Source: Octopus sinensis (taxonomy: Eukaryota). From it: a stretch of 8,021 nt of DNA. Positions 300 through 8,021 of the stretch are shown here, one piece after another; the first letter of the stretch is position 1; every line of letters begins with the position of its first letter. The notes under the pieces were generated by a model. The model was given only the letters and a program-made list of their open reading frames with translations. It ran no database searches and had not been told where the DNA came from. The position numbers and the translations under genes are program-made. The DNA is taken from the NCBI RefSeq assembly GCF_006345805.1, contig NW_021828553.1, positions 1-8,021 on the forward strand. The letters run 5' to 3'.

Positions 300-802
300 A
301 TACACTAATTTTGACTTATCTCCTCATTCTAATCAAACACATCGCCTCCCCCATCTATCCACAAATACTACCAATACATTCTCAAATTTTCATTCAAACC
401 ACAAGACACTTTCGAATGAGCAACACAGAATCCACGGCTCCATACTTTGAAATGACTAAACACGAACTACTATCAGAACTTACACACCATGTACAGGAAA
501 CTTTTTTACCACTTCTATACACCATTTTCCTCGAATAATGGAACTGCAACTACAATATCTTTATGTTTTATTTCTACTTTCATTCCCTTATTTCCCTCTA
601 TTTTCCCTATCTCCTCCTTTTCCATAATAATTCCTTATTTCGAACTCAAATATTTACCTCTATTTAACCATCACACACCGTCTTTGATGAAAGGATATCC
701 ATAATATCCCAGAAACAGCTGTAAGACTATATCTATACCGTTTTCCTTATAAATGTCCTGAAAACTCCTCACAGCCTTGGCTTTCTTATCTCATTTTGTC
801 GA
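300..802 (+). mobile_element. Putative non-autonomous Penelope-like/retrozyme-like fragment carrying a hammerhead motif
   Basis: C/T/A-rich segment between a SINE half and a (TA)n tract, containing an HHR-like motif at 680-727. No RT or GIY-YIG similarity is recognisable in the translations. Boundaries are approximate. Confidence 0.4.
680..727 (+). ncRNA. Variant minimal type I hammerhead ribozyme motif (C3U core, unpaired base of stem II)
   Basis: Stem I GTCT(680-683)/AGAC(724-727); core TTGATGA(684-690); stem II GGATAT-ccata-ATATCC with 2-nt mismatched base; GAAA(712-715); stem III AC-AGCT-GT (palindromic); cleavage triplet GTA(721-723). Confidence 0.65.
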
Positions 803-832
803 ATATATATATATATATAATATATATATAAT
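803..832. repeat. (TA)n microsatellite
   Basis: Direct reading. Confidence 0.95.
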
Positions 833-1146
833 AAATATTAGGGAATAAATCCAAATTTACAGGGAAAATCAGATTTAGGATTGAATCCAATTTTATAGTA
901 AAATATTATATAATATTAATTAGAGACAAAACCACTATTTTGCAAATCAAACAAAGAAAGACTTAATCCAATACATTAAAAAATTTTAATATAAATTAAA
1001 TAAAATTATATTCGCCACTACAATTGTTTCATGTCTCTTCTCAGGACATTCATCAGGTGGATTTCAGATCTAAAAATAATCAATATTTTTAAGATATAAA
1101 TTTAAAATGACTAAAACTATAAATAATATAAATTTATCAATGAAAA
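833..1146 (-). mobile_element. AT-rich hammerhead-bearing element (Penelope-like pseudo-LTR-type), left copy
   Basis: Bounded by (TA)n on both sides. Contains an intact HHR on the minus strand at 1015-1060. 907-1146 is duplicated in inverted form at 1217-1456. Confidence 0.6.
1015..1060 (-). ncRNA. Minimal type I hammerhead ribozyme, intact core (mirror copy of 1303-1348)
   Basis: Exact reverse complement of 1303-1348. Confidence 0.85.
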
Positions 1147-1302
1147 TATATATATATATATATATAATCTATATATAATCTATATATAATCTATATATAG
1201 ATTATATATATATATTTTTTCATTGATAAATTTATATTATTTATAGTTTTAGTCATTTTAAATTTATATCTTAAAAATATTGATTATTTTTAGATCTGAA
1301 AT

Positions 1303-1348
1303 CCACCTGATGAATGTCCTGAGAAGAGACATGAAACAATTGTAGTGG
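1303..1348 (+). ncRNA. Minimal type I hammerhead ribozyme, intact core
   Basis: Stem I CCAC(1303-1306)/GTGG(1345-1348); CTGATGA(1307-1313); stem II ATGTC(1314-1318)/GACAT(1328-1332), extendable by CT-GAGA-AG; GAAA(1333-1336); stem III AC-AATT-GT (palindromic); cleavage triplet GTA(1342-1344). Confidence 0.85.
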
Positions 1349-1450
1349 CGAATATAATTTTATTTAATTTATATTAAAATTTTTTAATGTATTGGATTAA
1401 GTCTTTCTTTGTTTGATTTGCAAAATAGTGGTTTTGTCTCTAATTAATAT

Positions 1451-1455
1451 TATAT

Positions 1456-1496
<41 letters not shown>
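1451..1496. repeat. (TA)n microsatellite
   Basis: Direct reading. It lies where the SINE's internal microsatellite is expected. Confidence 0.95.
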
Positions 1497-1499
<3 letters not shown>

Positions 1500-1500
1500 T

Positions 1501-1658
1501 TCTTCTTTCAGTTTTCGTCTACCAAATCCACTCACAAGGCTTTTGTCGGCCCGAGGCTATAGTAGAAGACACTTGCCCAAGATGCCACGCAGTGGGACTG
1601 AACCTGGAACCATGTGGCTGGTAAGCAAACTACTTACCACACAGCCAGTCCTGCGCCT
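1501..1658 (-). mobile_element. 5' half (tRNA head plus CORE-like domain) of CORE-type SINE
   Basis: Minus strand reads AGGCGCAGGACTGGCTGTGTGGTAAG (A box), GGTTCAGTCCC (B box) and GGCATCTTGGGCAAGTGTCTT (resembles MIR core GACCTTGGGCAAGTCACTT). Matches 4202-4365 and 7603-7763. Confidence 0.92.
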
Positions 1659-1861
1659 ATGTAGATAATAATACAGTTGATCGAACAACTGAATTCTCTT
1701 TGTTGAAACCGACGAAGATCCACCACCACCACCACTAGATCTATGGAACCTGTCACTCTGCTACGTCAAAAATGAAATTAAAATCAATGCTGGCGCTAGT
1801 TTTTGTTGTAGGGGTGAAGTATGGTGGAGGAAACCTAATATTTGATTGCAGATTGGAAGCA

Positions 1862-1954
1862 CAAAGCAGTGATTGAGACAGATGTAAACTTGTTACCGGT
1901 TCGAATATGCTTAAGACATATCCCAGCCCGTAAGAAAGCCATTTATTGCATTTT
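1862..1954 (-). repeat. Dispersed copy of the hairpin-bearing segment of the ~335-bp HHR unit
   Basis: Minus strand CTTTCTTACGGG...ATATGTCTTAAGCATATTCGAACCGGTAACAAGTTT...ATCACTG matches 2502-2575 and 2840-2890. Confidence 0.8.
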
Positions 1955-1955
1955 A

Positions 1956-2000
<45 letters not shown>

Positions 2001-2008
2001 CAGTAGTT

Positions 2009-2055
<47 letters not shown>

Positions 2056-2056
2056 T

Positions 2057-2087
<31 letters not shown>
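1956..2087. repeat. (TAG)n microsatellite, 44 units with one CAG and two TTG interruptions
   Basis: Direct reading. It is the source of the poly-Thr and poly-Val ORFs. Confidence 0.97.
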
Positions 2088-2088
<1 letters not shown>

Positions 2089-2136
2089 TTTACGACACCT
2101 ATTTTTACAACACATAAGAAACGCATAAGAAACGTT

Positions 2137-2274
2137 GAGTCTTTTTATTTTTTGACATGACAGTTCCCATTAAAACACCAGAATAACGTAAAATGAACAC
2201 AACACGCTACCCGATCCGGGAATCGAATCCACGATCTAGGGATCGTGAGTGCAACATCCTAACCACTAGGCTGC
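2137..2274 (-). mobile_element. Short tRNA-derived SINE (third family)
   Basis: Minus strand GCAGCCTAGTGGTTAGG (A box) and GATTCGATTCCC (B box). Body and tail match 4875-5007 (CCCATTAAAACACCAG, TTTTGACATGA); head matches 5511-5600. Confidence 0.85.
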
Positions 2275-2344
2275 ATTTTGTTATATAGAAAAGTTTTCGC
2301 TAAACACACCAAGTAGGCTCGGAATGCCCTCTACCCAGACGTTG

Positions 2345-2384
2345 GACACATGCATCTCGGTATAATTATCTCCTCTTCAGTGTC
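2345..2384 (-). ncRNA. Degenerate (probably inactive) minimal hammerhead motif
   Basis: Minus strand GACA-CTGAAGA-GGAGATAATTATACC-GAGA-TGCA-T-G-TGTC. Stem I GACA/TGTC is intact, but GAAA is changed to GAGA and position 17 is G. Homologous to 2708-2747. Confidence 0.55.
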
Positions 2385-2431
2385 GAACTGACTACGAGAG
2401 ACCTAGTATCTCCTATTCTATTCCAGTCAAA

Positions 2432-2890
2432 GTACTGTGATTTGAAGTATTTACACTTAGTTGCCTACGACGAGTTCCTCCGCAAGAAAATGCATGATTA
2501 TCTTTCTTACAGGGTTCGAATATATCTGAAGCATATTCGAACTGGTAACAAGTTTATATTTACATACATCACTGTTTAGTGTTTCTGCTCCTTATTTTAT
2601 TTACAGCAAACCATTGATTAGCGCAACCAGTCGCAGCACGATGACGAGAATATAAGAGATATCCATTTCTTGTTTGTTAGTTCGTAACATTTCCCTTCCT
2701 GGTGTCTGATGCTGAAGAAGAGATAACCACTCCGAAATGCATACATACATCAGTCTGGTGCGCTTCGAACTGATTTGATCTGTTTACACCTTTCTGTCGA
2801 CAGCGACAAATTTTCTCCACGACAAACTGCTGTGATTGACTTTCTAACGGGTTCGAATACGTCTCAAGCATATTTGAACTGGTAACAGGT
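2432..2890 (+). repeat. Degenerate tandem repeat, ~335-bp period (about 1.4 units), containing an HHR motif and a conserved hairpin
   Basis: Colinear anchors: TGATTTGA at 2438 and 2771; TTTACAC at 2450 and 2784; GGTTCGAATA at 2513 and 2850; GAACTGGTAACA in both units. Confidence 0.7.
2706..2753 (+). ncRNA. Minimal type I hammerhead motif, near-canonical
   Basis: CTGAAGA(2712-2718); stem II GAG-ataacca-CTC with an A.C closing mismatch; GAAA(2734-2737). Folds either as palindromic A-TGCA-T with a 3-bp stem I, or as ATG-cata-CAT with a 6-bp stem I CTGATG(2706-2711)/CATCAG(2748-2753). Confidence 0.65.
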
Positions 2891-2914
2891 TGGTATTAGT
2901 ATATGATTGGAGTC

Positions 2915-2992
2915 TCATGTTATCGACACCTGGAAGAATAAAAGTGAAAGTTGACCAGGTCGAGAATTGAACGCAGAGTGTAAAGGGGGCGT
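2915..2992 (-). mobile_element. Degenerate fragment of the RTE-5'/Ceph-like SINE
   Basis: Minus strand TTTACACTCTGCGTTCAATTCTCGACCTGGTCAACTTT...GTGTCGATAA aligns with TTACGTTCTGAGTTCAAATTCCGCCGAGGTCGACTTT...GGGTCGATAA at 6665-6727. Confidence 0.6.
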
Positions 2993-3715: not shown

Positions 3716-3920
3716 TAATTACTTCGTCCAGGTGAGAGTTGTGATGAGGACAGACGAGTTTGGTTTTTATTTAAGTTCCTTTTTCTTTTCAGCGTTCTGT
3801 TTTCTCTACCTGGCAATGCATAAATAGCTGTGCCGTTTATAGAGTTTCTAATTCCGGGTTCTATAATCATATGTATTTTTGTTGTTGCTTTTTGTGTTAA
3901 CTTCCACTAACACATAATTA

Positions 3921-4167
3921 TTGGGTCGGTGCATAATTACTGCGACATTTTTTCAACAAATTTTATTCAATAAAAACAATGATATTTAACAAAAACATCT
4001 TTAAATGACGGTCTGACCGTCTGCCAAGCAAACGGGAAGCAGTAATTGAAGTAGATGGTGAATATGCTCCGGAATAATCATTTAAAGATGTTTTTGTAAC
4101 ATGTTGTTATTAGTTTTGTTGAATAAAATTTGTTGAAAAAAGCCGCACTAATTATGCACCAACCCAA
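3921..4167 (+). mobile_element. Mariner-derived MITE/internal deletion derivative, 247 bp, TA target-site duplication
   Basis: Termini TTGGGTCGGTGCATAATTA / TAATTATGCACCAACCCAA flanked by TA (3919-3920, 4168-4169). The imperfect inverted repeats extend ~88-90 bp. 4015-4077 translates to DRLPSKREAVIEVDGEYAPE*, resembling a mariner transposase C-terminus (LP.RW..V....G.Y). Confidence 0.9.
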
Positions 4168-4201
4168 TATAATTAATCTAAGACACCCTCCTCTCGAAGT
4201 C

Positions 4202-4612
4202 AGGCGCAAGTGTGGCTGTGTAGTAAGAAGTTTGCTTCCCAACCACATGGTTCTGGGCTCAGTCCCACTGCGTGGCACCTAGGGCAAATGTCTTCTACTA
4301 TAGCCTCGGGTCGACAAAAGCCTTGTCAGTAGATTTGGTAGACGGAAACTAAAAGAAGCCCGTCGTATATATGTATATGTATATATGTATGTGTGTGTCT
4401 TAGTATCTGTGTTTGTTCCCCTGTTCCCCACCACTGCTTGGTGTATTACGTCCCATAACCTGGCGGTTCGACAAAAAAAAACGCTGAAATAAGGACCAGG
4501 CTTTAATAAAAGTGAAAACTGGTGTCGATTCGTTCGGCTAAAATTCTTTAAGGCGATGCCCCAGCTTGGCCACAGTTTAATGACTGGTAAAAAGAACGAA
4601 AGAATAAAAGAA
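4202..4612 (+). mobile_element. Full-length CORE-type tRNA-derived SINE with internal (TA)/(TG) microsatellite
   Basis: A box TGGCTGTGTAG, B box GGGCTCAGTCCC, CORE-like GGCACCTAGGGCAAATGTCTT, microsatellite at ~4365-4398, and 3' tail ...GGCCACAGTTTAATGACTG...AAAGAATAAAAG. Confidence 0.92.
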
Positions 4613-4763: not shown

Positions 4764-4874
4764 ATTAGAATACATAGCATCTTGGAACAACAGACCATTC
4801 TGATAACAACAAGAGCAACAAAAACACCGGGTCGTCTGCAAGTTTTATTGAAATGTTAAAAAAAAAAAACTTTG

Positions 4875-5007
4875 GGTCTTTTTTCTTTTGACATGATAGT
4901 TCCCATTAAAACACCAGGGCAACGTAAAATAGAAACAACACGCTGCCCGATCCAGGAACTGAACCCACGATCTACAAATGGTGAGTGCTGCATCCTAACT
5001 ACTAAGT
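4875..5007 (-). mobile_element. Short tRNA-derived SINE (third family)
   Basis: Colinear with 2137-2274; B box GGTTCAGTTCC on the minus strand. Confidence 0.85.
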
Positions 5008-5317: not shown

Positions 5318-5510
5318 CATTTGCTAGTCATTAGACTGCGGCCATGCTGGGGCACAGACTTGAAGAATTTTAATCAAACGAATCGATCCCAGTACTTAGT
5401 TTTTTAAGCTCGTACTTATTCTAGCGGTTTCTTTTGCCGAAGCGCTGTGCTTCGGGGACGTAAACACACTAGCACCGGTTGTCAAGTAGAGGTGGGAGAC
5501 AAATGCAAAC
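5318..5510 (-). mobile_element. 3' half of CORE-type SINE
   Basis: AGTCATTAGACTGCGGCCATGCTGGGGCAC...CTTTTGCCGAAG...GGGGACGTAAACACAC...GGTTGTCAAG matches 7320-7495. Confidence 0.88.
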
Positions 5511-5645
5511 GCATGGCCTAGTAGTTAGGGTGTTGCACTCACGATAGCGAGATCATGGTTTCAATTCCTAGACCAGGTGGTGCGTTGTGTTCTTAAGCAA
5601 CGTACTTCATTTCACGTTGCTCTGCGATCACTTCGACACATGAAG
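5511..5645 (+). mobile_element. tRNA-derived SINE related to the third family (longer body variant)
   Basis: A box TGGCCTAGTAG and B box GGTTTCAATTCC; head homologous to the 2137-2274 and 4875-5007 copies; body has an extra ~16 nt (TTAAGCAACGTACTTC). Confidence 0.8.
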
Positions 5646-5653
5646 TGGGTTGG

Positions 5654-5905
5654 GTGTGTGTGTGTGTGTAAACGTCTGTCTTTCTGTCTGTCTGTGTTTG
5701 CCCCCACCACCACCACCACCACCACCATCATCGCCTAACAACCGATGTTGGTGTGTTTACGCCCCAGTAAGGTAGCGCTTCGGCAAAAGAGACAGATAGA
5801 GTAAGTATTAGACTTACAAAGAATAAATCCTGGGTTCGATTAGCTCGACTAAAGGTGGTGCTCCAGCATGGCCGCAATCAAATAACTGAAACAAGTGAAA
5901 GAATA
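5654..5905 (+). mobile_element. 3' half of CORE-type SINE starting at its (GT)n tract, with a (CAC)n expansion
   Basis: GGTGCTCCAGCATGGCCGCAATCAAATAACTGAAACAAGTGAAAG tail; TTCGGCAAAAGAGAC body. Confidence 0.88.
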
Positions 5906-6065: not shown

Positions 6066-6176
6066 GTGTGTGTGTGTGTTTGCGTTGGTCTGCCACCGCT
6101 ACTTGACAACCGGTGCTAGAGTGTTTACGTCCCCGAAGCACAGCGCTTCGGCAAAAGAAACCGCTAGAATATGTAC
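6066..6176 (+). mobile_element. Middle fragment of CORE-type SINE, near-identical to the reverse complement of 5412-5510
   Basis: 6093-6176 versus the reverse complement of 5412-5495: 3 mismatches in 84 nt. Confidence 0.85.
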
Positions 6177-6184
6177 CGAGTTTT

Positions 6185-6338
6185 CTTTCTGCTTCGACCT
6201 ACCAAATCCACTCACAAGGCTTTCGTCGACGAGAGGCCTTAGTAGAAGACACTTGCCCAAGGTTTCACGCAGTGGGACTGAACCCGGAACCATGTAGTTG
6301 GGAAGCAAGCTTCTTACCATAGACACACACCTGCACCT
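6185..6338 (-). mobile_element. 5' half of CORE-type SINE
   Basis: CTACCAAATCCACTCACAAGGC...GACACTTGCCCAAGG...GCAGTGGGACTGAACCCGGAACCATG matches the other copies. Confidence 0.9.
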
Positions 6339-6491
6339 GGGATTAATTTAATCGATTGTACCTTACGTCCGAAAATGTGAGATGGATGTTGTGCTAATAT
6401 TAAAAATCAACATGCAGATTACGTATTAGGCAACGACGACAAAAAAAAGAACTTCCGGTGAATAGGCACTGCGCAGCCAGCTTGGTTAGAC

Positions 6492-6560: not shown

Positions 6561-6600
6561 ATCTTGAGCTGGTGGACCTTTCAATATCCTGTAGTCCGAA

Positions 6601-7148
6601 AGGCGGAGAGCTAGCAGAAACGTTAGCACGCCGGACGAAATGCTTAGCAGTATTTCGTCTGCCGTTACGTTCTGAGTTCAAATTCCGCCGAGGTCGACTT
6701 TGCCTTTCATCCTTTCTGGGTCGATAAATTAAGTACCACTGGGGTCGATGTAATCGACTTAATCCGTTTGTTGTCCTCTGTCCTTGTTTTGTCTCTCTTT
6801 GTTTAGTAGCCCTTGTGGGTAGTAAGAAATAAGTATTTTCGTATGCCGTTTACGTTCTGAGTTCAAATTCCACCGAAGTCGACTTTGCCGTTCATCCTTT
6901 CGGGGTCGATAAATTAAGTACCAGTTGCGTACTGGAATCGATCTAATCGACTGGCCCCGTCCCCCAAAATTTCGGGCCTTGTGTCTAGAATAGAAAAGAT
7001 TCTATTCCCCAACGACGGCGAGCTAGCAGGAACGCTAGTACGCCGGGCGAAATGCTTAGCGGTATTTCGTCTGTTTTTACGTTCTGTGTTCAAATTCCGC
7101 CGAAGTCAACTTTACCTATCATCCTTTCGGGGTCGATAAGTTAAGTAG
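6601..7148 (+). mobile_element. Three tandem units of a tRNA-derived SINE with an RTE-5'/Ceph-like body (6601-6832, headless 6833-7010, 7013-7148)
   Basis: Each unit has TACGTTCTG.GTTCAAATTCC (B box) and GTC.ACTTT.CC..TCATCCTTTC.GGGTCGATAA.TTAAGTA. Units 1 and 3 have the GAGCTAGCAG.AACG.TAG head; unit 2 lacks it. Confidence 0.88.
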
Positions 7149-7198
7149 CATCACAATTTCTCACATTACCCATAAGATATAGTAATTAACATTATAGG

Positions 7199-7312: not shown

Positions 7313-7527
7313 TTTTACTTGTTTCAGTCATTTTGACTGCGGCCATGCTGGAGCACCACCCTCAGTCGAGCAAATCAACCCCAGGACTTATTATTTGTAA
7401 GCCTGGTACTTATTTTATCGGTCTCTTTTGCCGAACTGCTAGATTTCGGGGACGTAAACACACCAACATCGGTTGTCAAGCAATGGCGGGGTGACAAACA
7501 CACATACACATGCACACACACATAAAC

Positions 7528-7575
<48 letters not shown>

Positions 7576-7763
7576 TATAGTATATATATATATATATATA
7601 TACGACGGGTTCTTCAGTTTTTCGTCTACCAAATCCACTCACAAGGCATTGGTCAGACCGAGGCTATAGTAGAAGACATTTGTCCAAGGTGTCACGCAGT
7701 GGGACTGAACCCGGAACCATGTGGTTGGGAAGCAAGCTTCTTATCACACAGCCACGCTTGTGC
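7313..7763 (-). mobile_element. Full-length CORE-type SINE with long internal (CA)/(TA) microsatellite (~7498-7602)
   Basis: Tail, body, microsatellite, CORE-like domain and tRNA head are all colinear with the 4202-4612 copy, in reverse orientation. Confidence 0.93.
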
Positions 7764-7895
7764 TTTTTTAATTACTTTTGTAAATTACTTCTTGTTAAAT
7801 TATTTTTGTAACTGGTAAAGTCCAAAACAACATTCCCAGAATTGCACAGATGCCAGTCTGCTGGCTTGAGACCGGTAAGATCGTACCCATGGATT

Positions 7896-8021
7896 CAGCG
7901 GGTGTGTAGTAAGAAGCTTGCCTACCAACCACATGGTCCCGGGTTCAGTCCCACTGCGTAGCACTTTGGACAAGTGTTTTCTACTAATGCCTCGAGCCGA
8001 CCAAGCCTTGTGAGTGGATTT
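7896..8021 (+). mobile_element. 5' part of CORE-type SINE (runs off the window end)
   Basis: GTGTGTAGTAAGAAGCTTG...GGGTTCAGTCCCACTGCG...TTGGACAAGTGTTTTCTACTA...CCTTGTGAGTGGATTT. Confidence 0.9.

What the first reader, a model, noticed from the sequence alone, without database searches (positions are those of the whole stretch)
680..2753. Cluster of five minimal hammerhead ribozyme motifs from three families in ~2.1 kb of apparently junk DNA
Seen: type I HHR architecture at 680-727(+), 1015-1060(-), 1303-1348(+), 2345-2384(-) and 2706-2753(+). Each has a short stem I and a palindromic stem/loop III (ACAGCTGT, ACAATTGT, ATGCAT). Established: such minimal HHRs mark the pseudo-LTRs of Penelope-like elements and cleave as dimers through the palindromic loop III, and tandem type I HHR repeats (retrozymes) produce small circular RNAs in animals. 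Inference: this is a nest of non-autonomous, ORF-less ribozyme retroelements. I cannot tell whether these families are already catalogued.
Basis: partly seen in the sequence, partly recalled or inferred. Interest (0 to 1): 0.85.

Follow-up and report, generated by a model that had tools for sequence, protein, structure and literature searches.

The report
Hammerhead ribozyme relics of Penelope-type retroelements
This stretch of non-coding animal DNA holds five real but mostly decayed copies of a tiny self-cutting RNA motif, left by short parasitic retroelements of a kind already well known in invertebrate and lower-vertebrate genomes, so it is a good catch but an ordinary one.

Summary
All five motifs are at the stated coordinates and are far beyond chance. 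They are not five equivalent ribozymes.

- **F2, 1015-1060(-) and 1303-1348(+):** one identical 46-nt sequence on the two arms of a 100 % perfect ~550-bp palindrome. It is a flawless minimal type I hammerhead.
- **F3B, 2706-2753(+):** the core is intact, but there is an A.C mismatch at the base of helix II and an ACAT duplication in helix I.
- **F3A, 2345-2384(-):** a diverged copy of the same family. It carries GAGA instead of GAAA and G at position 17, so it should be dead.
- **F1, 680-727(+):** U3 instead of C3 and a loosened base of helix II.

The window has no RT or GIY-YIG ORF. No family has two ribozymes in direct orientation, so retrozyme-style circular RNA from this locus is not supported.

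The layout matches published Penelope-like element (PLE) insertions. There are two head-to-head inverted pairs and one partial tandem, and F2 sits inside (TA)n next to a SINE tail.

Best reading: one young and several old ORF-less, 5'-truncated or non-autonomous PLE-type elements nested together. They are largely inert here.

No further copies could be fetched, so family consensus, covariation and a link to an autonomous PLE remain untested. This is a known kind of element, and interest is modest.

The parts
680..727 (+). F1 hammerhead relic: GUCU / UUGAUGA / AA-GGAUAU-CCAUA-AUAUCC-CA / GAAA / CAGCUG-U / A17 / AGAC. The predicted cleavage site would be 723/724. U3 replaces C3.
   Evidence: sequence. 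(hit with 1 core mismatch). (expected 0.0015-0.008 per window). (homodimer folds as a double hammerhead).
803..838 (.). (TA)n tract with an 11-nt period (ATATATAATAT), to the left of the F2 palindrome.
   Evidence: TRF.
839..906 (.). 68 nt of unexplained sequence between the left (TA)n and the left F2 arm. It could be flanking DNA or an optional 3' extension of the left copy.
   Evidence: no significant similarity to the F2 arm or to anything else in the window.
907..1146 (-). F2 left arm, a ~240-nt unit in minus orientation with its 3' end pointing outward (left).
   Evidence: I1 (arms 907-1160 / 1203-1456, 100 % complementary). (base-by-base symmetry).
1015..1060 (-). F2 hammerhead, minus-strand copy, identical to 1303-1348(+). 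Cleavage site between 1019 and 1018 on the minus strand.
1147..1216 (.). Centre of the palindrome: (TA)n with (TATATATAATC)n. It is slightly asymmetric, with a 1-nt indel at the inner junction.
1217..1456 (+). F2 right arm, a ~240-nt unit in plus orientation with its 3' end pointing outward (right).
1303..1348 (+). F2 hammerhead, fully consensus: CCAC / CUGAUGA / AUGUC-CUGAGAAGA-GACAU / GAAA / CAAUUG-U / A17 / GUGG. Cleavage after GUA at 1344/1345.
   Evidence: the only strict hits in the window. (0 of 2000 shuffles). (dimer -24.2 against 2 x -7.9 kcal/mol, with an intermolecular 8-bp helix III and helix I formed in trans).
1447..1663 (-). (TA)n tail (1447-1496) plus a SINE-like repeat (1497-1663). 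The right F2 arm abuts this tail.
   Evidence: 1447-1663 matches 7548-7770 at 84 % over 224 nt, TA tract included., D2.
1845..1955 (-). F3 copy A, 3' part, including the conserved hairpin at about 1899-1927.
   Evidence: 1856-1976 against 2585-2465, 74 %; 1887-1959 against 2891-2819, 77 %. (alignment).
1956..2278 (.). Interruptions inside F3 copy A: (TAG)44 at 1956-2088 and a SINE-like repeat at 2127-2278.
   Evidence: (2127-2268 matches 4864-5004 at 83 %).
2279..2437 (-). F3 copy A, 5' part with its hammerhead relic.
2345..2384 (-). F3A hammerhead relic: GACA / CUGAAGA / GG-AGAUAAUUAUA-CC / GAGA / UGCA-U / G17 / UGUC. A14G and G17 both fall at invariant positions.
   Evidence: 2 core mismatches. 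(74 % identity to 2712-2758).
2438..2590 (+). F3 copy C: 3' part only, with no ribozyme (5'-truncated). It lies head-to-head with copy A and in tandem with copy B. Perfect 10-bp hairpin at 2514-2542.
   Evidence: 2438-2560 matches 2771-2897 at 73 %..
2591..2930 (+). F3 copy B. The 5' boundary is uncertain. Hammerhead at 2706-2753 and hairpin at 2851-2879.
2706..2753 (+). F3B hammerhead: CUGAUG / CUGAAGA / A.GAG-AUAACCA-CUC.C / GAAA / UGCA-U / A17 / CAUA-CAUCAG. The core is intact and cleavage would follow AUA at 2743/2744. There is an A.C mismatch at 10.1/11.1 and an ACAT duplication in the 3' strand of helix I.
   Evidence: (hit at 2709-2746 with zero core mismatches, expected 0.0003)..

Best explanation
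The region is a small nest of short, ORF-less hammerhead-bearing retroelement copies of the Penelope-like (PLE) type. There are three sequence families of different ages.

Proposed life cycle (inferred from published work):
1. In master copies elsewhere in the genome, transcripts with two or more same-strand units pair through the palindromic helix III.
2. This forms a double hammerhead that cuts after N-U-A, releasing unit-length RNA.
3. That RNA may be ligated into circles.
4. It is copied back into DNA by a PLE reverse transcriptase / GIY-YIG endonuclease supplied in trans.
5. Integration often occurs in (TA)n tracts or next to older copies, with 5' truncation, partial tandems and head-to-head inverted copies.

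What the sequence shows here:
- F2 is a very young pair of identical ~240-nt units, 5' ends together and 3' ends outward, inside a (TA)n tract that is also the tail of a SINE.
- F3 is an old trio: an inverted copy A, a 5'-truncated copy C and a tandem copy B. The copies are 73-77 % identical, and copy A was later split by a SINE and a microsatellite.
- F1 is a solitary decayed copy.

What is inferred: the RNA-mediated origin, the dependence on a PLE enzyme, and cleavage activity. At this locus the elements are most likely inert. No same-strand partner of the same family is present, and three of the four distinct ribozyme sequences carry defects (core substitutions in F1 and F3A, helix defects in F3B).
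For: - The motifs are real and non-random.
- Helix III is a 6-8-nt palindrome in every family. The F1, F2 and F3B homodimers fold in silico into the double hammerhead, with an intermolecular helix III and helix I formed in trans.
- In their unit context the F2 and F3B motifs do not adopt the hammerhead fold as monomers. That fits the published need for dimers (PMC4209133; PMC6765202).
- The layout matches published PLE insertion signatures:
  - 'Dual min-HHRs ... ~100-700 bp apart but in opposite strands' (PMC4209133). Here the gaps are 242 and 321 bp.
  - 5' truncation, partial tandems, an inverted 5'-truncated copy adjacent at the 5' end, and (TA)n target bias (PMC8557442).
  - PLEs tend to insert into or next to earlier copies (PMC6765202).
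  - A purified PLE enzyme cleaves and extends both target strands in vitro (PMC11167929). That would give exactly head-to-head copies with their 3' ends outward.
- F2 is flanked by (TA)n on both sides and has (TA)n at its centre.
- There is no ORF or Pfam domain. GC content is 17-40 % across the region.
- Animal retrozymes have been argued to be pLTR-derived non-autonomous PLE sequences (bioRxiv 10.64898/2026.07.22.740005).
Against: - No autonomous PLE (RT plus GIY-YIG) is in the window, and none could be linked to these elements.
- No additional family members could be fetched. Consensus, covariation and copy number are therefore untested.
- F3 is not next to a (TA)n tract.
- The exact symmetry and 100 % identity of the F2 arms could also come from a DNA-level fold-back duplication or from an assembly error.
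- The 68 nt at 839-906 is unexplained.
- The role of the hammerhead in PLE transposition is itself unsettled. Catalytic mutants did not affect insertion in vitro, and no RNA-seq reads ended at the cleavage site (PMC11167929).
Confidence: 0.68

Rival explanations
1. The locus is an active animal retrozyme. Tandem type I hammerhead repeats are transcribed, self-cleave and are ligated into small circular RNAs produced from this very region.
For: - Unit sizes fit the 150-450-bp retrozyme monomers: F2 ~240 nt, and an F3 C-to-B period of ~333 nt (PMC7229834).
- GC content is low and there is no ORF.
- Helix III is palindromic.
Against: - No family has two hammerheads on the same strand.
- F3 copy C lacks the ribozyme.
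- F1, F2 and F3 have different helix III palindromes and different helix I sequences, so heterodimers would not form complete active sites.
- A transcript through F2 would fold into a ~250-bp perfect hairpin rather than a ribozyme.
Confidence: 0.05
2. The F2 palindrome did not arise by retrotransposition. A single hammerhead-bearing sequence was duplicated in inverted orientation at the DNA level, by fold-back or template switching at the self-complementary (TA)n tract. Alternatively the palindrome is an assembly artefact.
For: - The arms are 100 % identical over ~240 nt and stop at the same inner position.
- The centre is self-complementary (TA)n-like sequence, which can snap back.
Against: - The palindrome is internal to the window, with unique and different flanks.
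- Its centre is asymmetric, with 3 against 1 copies of the 11-mer and a 1-nt indel.
- The older F3 family shows the same head-to-head geometry with diverged arms, so this geometry recurs independently.
- Even if this rival is true, the hammerhead element itself is still real.
Confidence: 0.15
3. F2 is a palindromic MITE or foldback DNA transposon with a TA target that happens to carry a hammerhead sequence. It is moved by a transposase, not by reverse transcription.
For: - The structure is a perfect hairpin in TA-rich flanks.
- The same window holds a separate MITE-like inverted repeat at 3919-4169, so such elements exist in this genome.
Against: - A complete hammerhead on each arm is not expected by chance (0 of 2000 shuffles).
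- Hammerhead-bearing short repeats are a hallmark of PLE and retrozyme elements.
- No discrete terminal inverted repeat or target-site duplication can be defined in the TA-rich ends.
- The comparison MITE has 78-91 % complementary arms, not 100 %.
Confidence: 0.08
4. The motifs are chance matches found by a flexible human pattern search in AT-rich junk DNA.
For: - The loosest descriptor gives 0.15-0.20 hits per shuffled window.
- Rfam models score none of the five.
- 2345-2384 and 680-727 deviate at invariant core positions.
Against: - Strict and near-strict descriptors give 0 to 0.008 expected hits against 2-3 observed.
- The weakest motif is a homologue of a core-intact one and shares its 3' region.
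- All five lie within 2.1 kb, and there are none in the other 5.9 kb.
Confidence: 0.02

Closest known systems
Minimal type I hammerheads in the pseudo-LTRs of Penelope-like elements (Cervera & de la Pena 2014, PMC4209133; Lunse, Weinberg & Breaker 2017, known here only through citation in PMC6765202)
   Same: - Open, short helix I (3-6 bp) and no loop 1 / loop 2 tertiary contacts.
- Helix III reduced to a 6-8-nt palindrome that can only be stabilised in a dimer.
- Several heterogeneous families within one genome.
- Many solitary or opposite-strand pairs 100-700 bp apart.
- Association with truncated, ORF-less copies.
   Different: - No RT/GIY-YIG ORF or full pLTR-ORF-pLTR unit is present or linked.
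- F2 has A10.1-U11.1 and no bulged nucleotide after A9, whereas G10.1-C11.1 and that bulge are reported as typical.
- Helix II is 3-6 bp, against 6-8 bp in the examples described.
Animal non-LTR retrozymes (Cervera & de la Pena 2020, PMC7229834; Li, Clavereau & Pollet 2026 preprint, 10.64898/2026.07.22.740005)
   Same: - Non-coding, low-GC units of ~240-340 nt carrying a type I hammerhead with a weak helix III.
- Proposed derivation from PLE pLTRs and mobilisation in trans.
   Different: - Retrozymes are head-to-tail arrays in which every monomer has a ribozyme. Here the pairs are inverted, and the single tandem has only one ribozyme.
- Retrozyme hammerheads are mostly the canonical form with a 6-bp helix I and loop-loop contacts, not the minimal form.
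Schistosome SM-alpha / Sj-alpha SINE-like hammerhead retroposons (cited in PMC6765202)
   Same: Short, dispersed, ORF-less repeats that carry a hammerhead.
   Different: Those have a promoter followed by a canonical, efficiently cleaving hammerhead. No promoter or tRNA-like head was found in F1-F3.

Membership tests
Hammerhead ribozyme (type I, minimal variant) | 5' catalytic box C3-U4-G5-A6-N7-G8-A9 | tested here: met
   Met by F2 (CUGAUGA), F3B and F3A (CUGAAGA). Not met by F1 (UUGAUGA; U3 with G8, not the known U3-A8 covariant)..
Hammerhead ribozyme (type I, minimal variant) | 3' catalytic box G12-A13-A14 followed by the A15.1-U16.1 pair, and a cleavage-site nucleotide H17 (not G) | tested here: met
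   Met by F1 (GAAA...U-A), F2 (GAAA...U-A) and F3B (GAAA...U-A). Not met by F3A (GAGA, G17)..
Hammerhead ribozyme (type I, minimal variant) | Helices I and II base-paired directly against the core, with helix I open (type I topology) | tested here: met
   - F2: helix I 4 bp, helix II 5 bp, no slack.
- F1: helix I 4 bp; helix II 6 bp, but with 2 unpaired nucleotides on each side.
- F3B: helix I 3 bp (6 bp with a 4-nt bulge); helix II 3 bp after an A.C mismatch.
- F3A: helix I 4 bp, helix II 2 bp.
Hammerhead ribozyme (type I, minimal variant) | Match to a curated covariance model (Rfam Hammerhead_1 and related families) at the gathering score | tested here: not met
   No hammerhead hit at the gathering score or at E<=10, even on 81 nt around the perfect F2 motif. 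No Rfam hammerhead model scores even this consensus minimal motif.
Hammerhead ribozyme (type I, minimal variant) | Covariation in helices I-III within a family | not testable with these tools
   No further copies could be fetched. The in-window copies are either identical (F2) or number only two (F3).
Hammerhead ribozyme (type I, minimal variant) | Mg2+-dependent self-cleavage | not testable with these tools
   Needs in vitro transcription of monomer and dimer constructs.
Penelope-like element (PLE) | Single ORF with a telomerase-like RT and a GIY-YIG endonuclease | tested here: not met
   Only short ORFs, with no Pfam match among the ten longest. Absence from an 8-kb window does not exclude a truncated or trans-mobilised copy.
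Penelope-like element (PLE) | Minimal hammerhead with palindromic helix III in the terminal repeat | tested here: inconclusive
   The ribozyme type matches. Whether the carrying sequence is a pLTR cannot be told without a full element.
Penelope-like element (PLE) | Insertion signature: 5' truncation, partial tandems, and an inverted 5'-truncated copy head-to-head | tested here: met
   F2 is a head-to-head pair. F3 has inverted copy A, truncated copy C and tandem copy B. Compared with the description in PMC8557442.
Penelope-like element (PLE) | Microsatellite, often (TA)n, target bias and an optional 30-40-bp tail | tested here: inconclusive
   F2 lies in (TA)n, but F3 does not. The 68 nt at 839-906 could be a tail, but it is too long and has no comparator.
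Animal non-LTR retrozyme | Head-to-tail tandem repeats (150-450 bp), each monomer carrying a type I hammerhead | tested here: not met
   No two same-strand ribozymes of one family. The C-to-B tandem, with a period of ~333 nt, has one ribozyme.
Animal non-LTR retrozyme | Expression as linear and circular monomer RNAs | not testable with these tools
   No transcriptome data are available.

The most novel reading that the evidence does not exclude
F2 is a young, possibly still mobile ~240-nt ORF-less hammerhead element. Its perfectly identical head-to-head pair inside a SINE (TA)n tail would then be a natural footprint of target-primed reverse transcription from both cleaved target strands. That property has so far been shown only in vitro, for one purified PLE enzyme. 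It would give a genomic handle on how PLE machinery mobilises ribozyme-only passengers.
Probability: 0.15. Interest if true: 0.55.

Novelty: new member of a known kind. Interest (0 to 1): 0.3.

Why it matters
[quoted passage not shown] The kind is therefore not new.

The locus has some modest value:
- It is a compact worked example. Three unrelated families and three ages sit within 2.1 kb, and both typical insertion geometries are present.
- The intact, zero-divergence F2 pair in a (TA)n tract is a good candidate for testing dimer-dependent cleavage.
- The same pair could help ask how such ORF-less units are copied.

It also shows that Rfam-based annotation misses this class entirely.

Tried and rejected
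**Rfam.** Scans at the gathering score and at E<=10, on the whole window and on 81 nt around F2, gave no hammerhead or other ribozyme hit. The weak hits were all AT-microsatellite noise.

**Fetching further copies.** Every route failed:
- Exact-product look-up of the ORF spanning F3B.
- Protein homology with that ORF and with a SINE-derived ORF (no candidates, so this genome's non-coding ORFs are not in the protein collection).
- F2 pattern in metagenome contigs and viral contigs.
- SINE pattern in metagenome contigs.
- Sequence strings in the paper library (only unrelated primer hits).

The source organism could therefore not be identified. From memory the SINE-like repeats resemble cephalopod repeats, but I could not verify that and I do not rely on it.

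**Covariance model.** I considered building one from the in-window motifs.

**Similarity tests.**
- The 68 nt at 839-906 against the F2 arm: not significant.
- Between families: F1 against F2 and F1 against F3 are not significant. F2 against F3B is marginal, with 19 of 500 shuffles reaching the score.

**Other checks.**
- ARAGORN finds no tRNA.
- Supplementary files of the key paper are not held.
- Lunse et al. 2017 is not held.


Full report
**What is there.** The window is ORF-poor, repeat-rich DNA of animal type. It holds several SINE-like families, microsatellites and a MITE-like inverted repeat, with no tRNA and no Rfam family at the gathering score.

**The five motifs, in hammerhead numbering.**
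- **F2**, 1303-1348(+) and 1015-1060(-): CCAC/CUGAUGA/AUGUC-CUGAGAAGA-GACAU/GAAA/CAAUUG-U/A17/GUGG. Every invariant position is consensus. Helix I is 4 bp and helix II is 5 bp. Helix III is the palindrome ACAAUUGU. Cleavage would follow GUA at 1344/1345.
- **F3B**, 2706-2753(+): CUGAUG/CUGAAGA/A.GAG-AUAACCA-CUC.C/GAAA/UGCA-U/A17/CAUA-CAUCAG. The core is intact. There is an A.C mismatch at 10.1/11.1. A duplicated ACAT leaves either a 3-bp helix I or a 6-bp helix I with a 4-nt bulge. Cleavage would follow AUA, not GUA.
- **F3A**, 2345-2384(-): the same family, but with GAGA instead of GAAA and with G17. Both are invariant positions of the hammerhead (established mutational knowledge), and helix II is reduced to 2 bp. 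Combining the two F3 copies suggests an ancestral helix II of GGAG/CUCC with the usual G10.1-C11.1 pair. This is an inference from two sequences only.
- **F1**, 680-727(+): GUCU/UUGAUGA/AA-GGAUAU-CCAUA-AUAUCC-CA/GAAA/CAGCUG-U/A17/AGAC. U3 faces G8. Only the U3-A8 covariant is known as a natural variant (PMC4209133), and C3/G8 single mutants abolish activity (PMC11167929).

**Chance.** A descriptor of my own requires the two core boxes, a palindromic helix III of 6-10 nt, and helices I and II adjacent to the core.
- With no core mismatch it finds only the two F2 copies. None of 2000 dinucleotide shuffles, whole-window or in 500-nt blocks, gave a hit.
- With at most one core mismatch it adds F1, against 0.0015-0.008 expected.
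- An untailored variant (no core mismatch, helix I >=3 bp, one nucleotide of slack at helix II) finds F2 twice plus F3B, against 0.0003 expected.
- A descriptor loosened after the fact until it catches all five finds exactly those five in 8 kb on both strands, against 0.15-0.20 expected.

F3A alone would be unremarkable on that last figure. It is nevertheless a diverged homologue of F3B: 74 % over 47 nt (E = 0.003), followed by the same 3' region.

There are three independent families rather than five independent events. F2 against F3B shows only a marginal resemblance, and F1 shows none to either.

Rfam's hammerhead models report nothing even at E<=10 on an 81-nt stretch around F2.

**Context of F2.** The two F2 motifs lie on the arms of an inverted repeat that is 100 % complementary (907-1160 / 1203-1456).
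- Base by base, the unique arms are about 907-1146 and 1217-1456.
- The centre (1147-1216) is (TA)n with (TATATATAATC)n. It is slightly asymmetric, and there is a 1-nt indel at the inner junction.
- Each arm reads 5' to 3' from the centre outward. It has ~86 nt, then the hammerhead, then ~108 nt.
- On the right the arm abuts (TA)25. Together with the following 165 nt, that tract recurs at 7548-7770 (84 % over 224 nt), so it is the tail of a SINE-like repeat.
- On the left there is a (TA)n tract at 803-838 with the same kind of 11-nt period as the centre. It is separated from the arm by 68 nt that match nothing.
- The zero divergence of the arms contrasts with the 80-89 % identity among SINE copies, and with the 78-91 % complementary arms of the MITE-like repeat at 3919-4169. 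This structure is therefore young.

**Context of F3.** Self-comparison and alignment define three copies.
- **Copy A**, minus strand: a 5' flank and ribozyme at 2437-2279, then a SINE-like insertion (2127-2278) and (TAG)44 (1956-2088), then the 3' part at 1955-1845.
- **Copy C**, plus strand, 2438-2590: the 3' part only.
- **Copy B**, plus strand, ~2591-2930: ribozyme plus 3' part.

Copies A and C meet head-to-head. C and B lie in tandem, with a start-to-start distance of ~333 nt. All three share a hairpin, GTTCGAATAT-N9-ATATTCGAAC, followed by TGGTAACA about 100 nt downstream of the ribozyme position. Identities of 73-77 % make this family old.

**No coding capacity.** The longest ORF is 120 aa and is a microsatellite read-through. 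The ten longest ORFs have no Pfam match.

**How it most likely works.**

*Shown.* The motif architecture, the palindromic helix III, the copy geometry and the absence of ORFs are read directly from the sequence.

*Computed.*
- F1, F2 and F3B homodimers fold into the double hammerhead, with an intermolecular helix III and helix I formed in trans. For F2 the dimer is -24.2 kcal/mol against -15.8 for two monomers.
- The F2 and F3B motifs do not adopt the hammerhead fold as monomers in their unit context.

*Inferred from the literature.*
- Minimal hammerheads of this architecture sit in the terminal repeats of Penelope-like elements. They cleave poorly and only as dimers (PMC4209133; PMC6765202).
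- PLE insertions are typically 5'-truncated and partially tandem. They are often accompanied by an inverted truncated copy at the 5' side, and are biased to microsatellites such as (TA)n (PMC8557442).
- PLEs tend to land in or beside earlier copies.
- A purified PLE enzyme nicks and extends both target strands (PMC11167929). That would produce head-to-head copies with their 3' ends outward, which is the geometry of both F2 and F3 copies A and C.
- Animal retrozymes have been argued to be pLTR-derived non-autonomous PLE sequences (bioRxiv 10.64898/2026.07.22.740005).

*Reading.* I therefore read the region as nested PLE-type, ORF-less insertions of three families and ages. At this locus they are probably inert:
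- No family offers a same-strand partner for dimer formation.
- A transcript through F2 would form a long perfect hairpin.
- Three of the four distinct ribozyme sequences carry defects.

**Rivals.**
- An active retrozyme array is not supported, because there is no direct tandem of ribozymes.
- A DNA-level fold-back duplication or an assembly artefact could explain the F2 symmetry, but not the existence of the element. It is also made less likely by the asymmetric centre and by the independent, older head-to-head pair in F3.
- A MITE or foldback transposon carrying a ribozyme cannot be excluded without more copies.
- Pure chance is excluded for F2, F3B and F1.

**What could not be done.** Every route to further copies failed. 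The following therefore remain open:
- family consensus, covariation and copy number;
- catalogue status in Repbase or Dfam;
- the link to an autonomous RT/GIY-YIG element;
- the source organism.

**Verdict.** It is over-stated on function, since two of the motifs are mutated at invariant positions. It is wrong in implying a retrozyme-like tandem. This class is well known and abundant in animal genomes, so novelty is at most 'new member of a known kind' and interest is modest. The most useful item is the pristine F2 head-to-head pair in a (TA)n tract.

Noticed in passing
window 3919-4169: A MITE-like inverted repeat of ~250 bp. The arms are 78-91 % complementary and the termini read TATTGGGTCGGTGCATAATTA... 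It is unrelated to the hammerhead elements.
   Followed up: partly
window 1447-1663, 4202-4390(-), 6183-6343, 7548-7770, 7900-8021(-): Five copies of a SINE-like repeat, 80-89 % identical to each other. Three of them carry a (TA)n or TA-rich tail, and the F2 palindrome sits against one such tail. ARAGORN and Rfam call no tRNA in them.
   Followed up: partly
window 2514-2542, 2851-2879, 1899-1927(-): A conserved hairpin, GTTCGAATAT-N9-ATATTCGAAC followed by TGGTAACA, in all three F3 copies about 100 nt 3' of the ribozyme position. It has 10/10, 9/10 (one G.U) and 8/10 pairs. It may be a structured 3' element of the family, and its 5' arm resembles a tRNA B-box.
   Followed up: partly
window 1307-1330 versus 2706-2729: F2 (CUGAUGA-AUGUC-CUGAGAAGAGA) and F3B (CUGAUG-CUGAAGAAGAGA) share two blocks used in different structural roles. 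A block that is loop II in F2 forms the core box plus helix II in F3. The similarity is only marginal, with 19 of 500 shuffles reaching the score.
   Followed up: partly
window 839-906: 68 nt between the left (TA)n tract and the left F2 arm, with no match to the arm or to any other part of the window. It could be flanking DNA or an optional 3' tail of the left copy.
   Followed up: yes
window 803-838 and 1147-1210: The left flanking TA tract and the centre of the palindrome both show an 11-nt period (ATATATAATAT and TATATATAATC). This suggests they are pieces of one microsatellite split by the insertion.
   Followed up: no
window 2127-2278, 4864-5004, 5507-5592(-); 6596-7150 and 2920-2984(-); 55-271, 5326-5496, 7332-7490, 5729-5882(-), 6075-6177(-): At least three further dispersed repeat families, 74-93 % identical within each family. 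Most of the 8-kb window is interspersed repeats.
   Followed up: no
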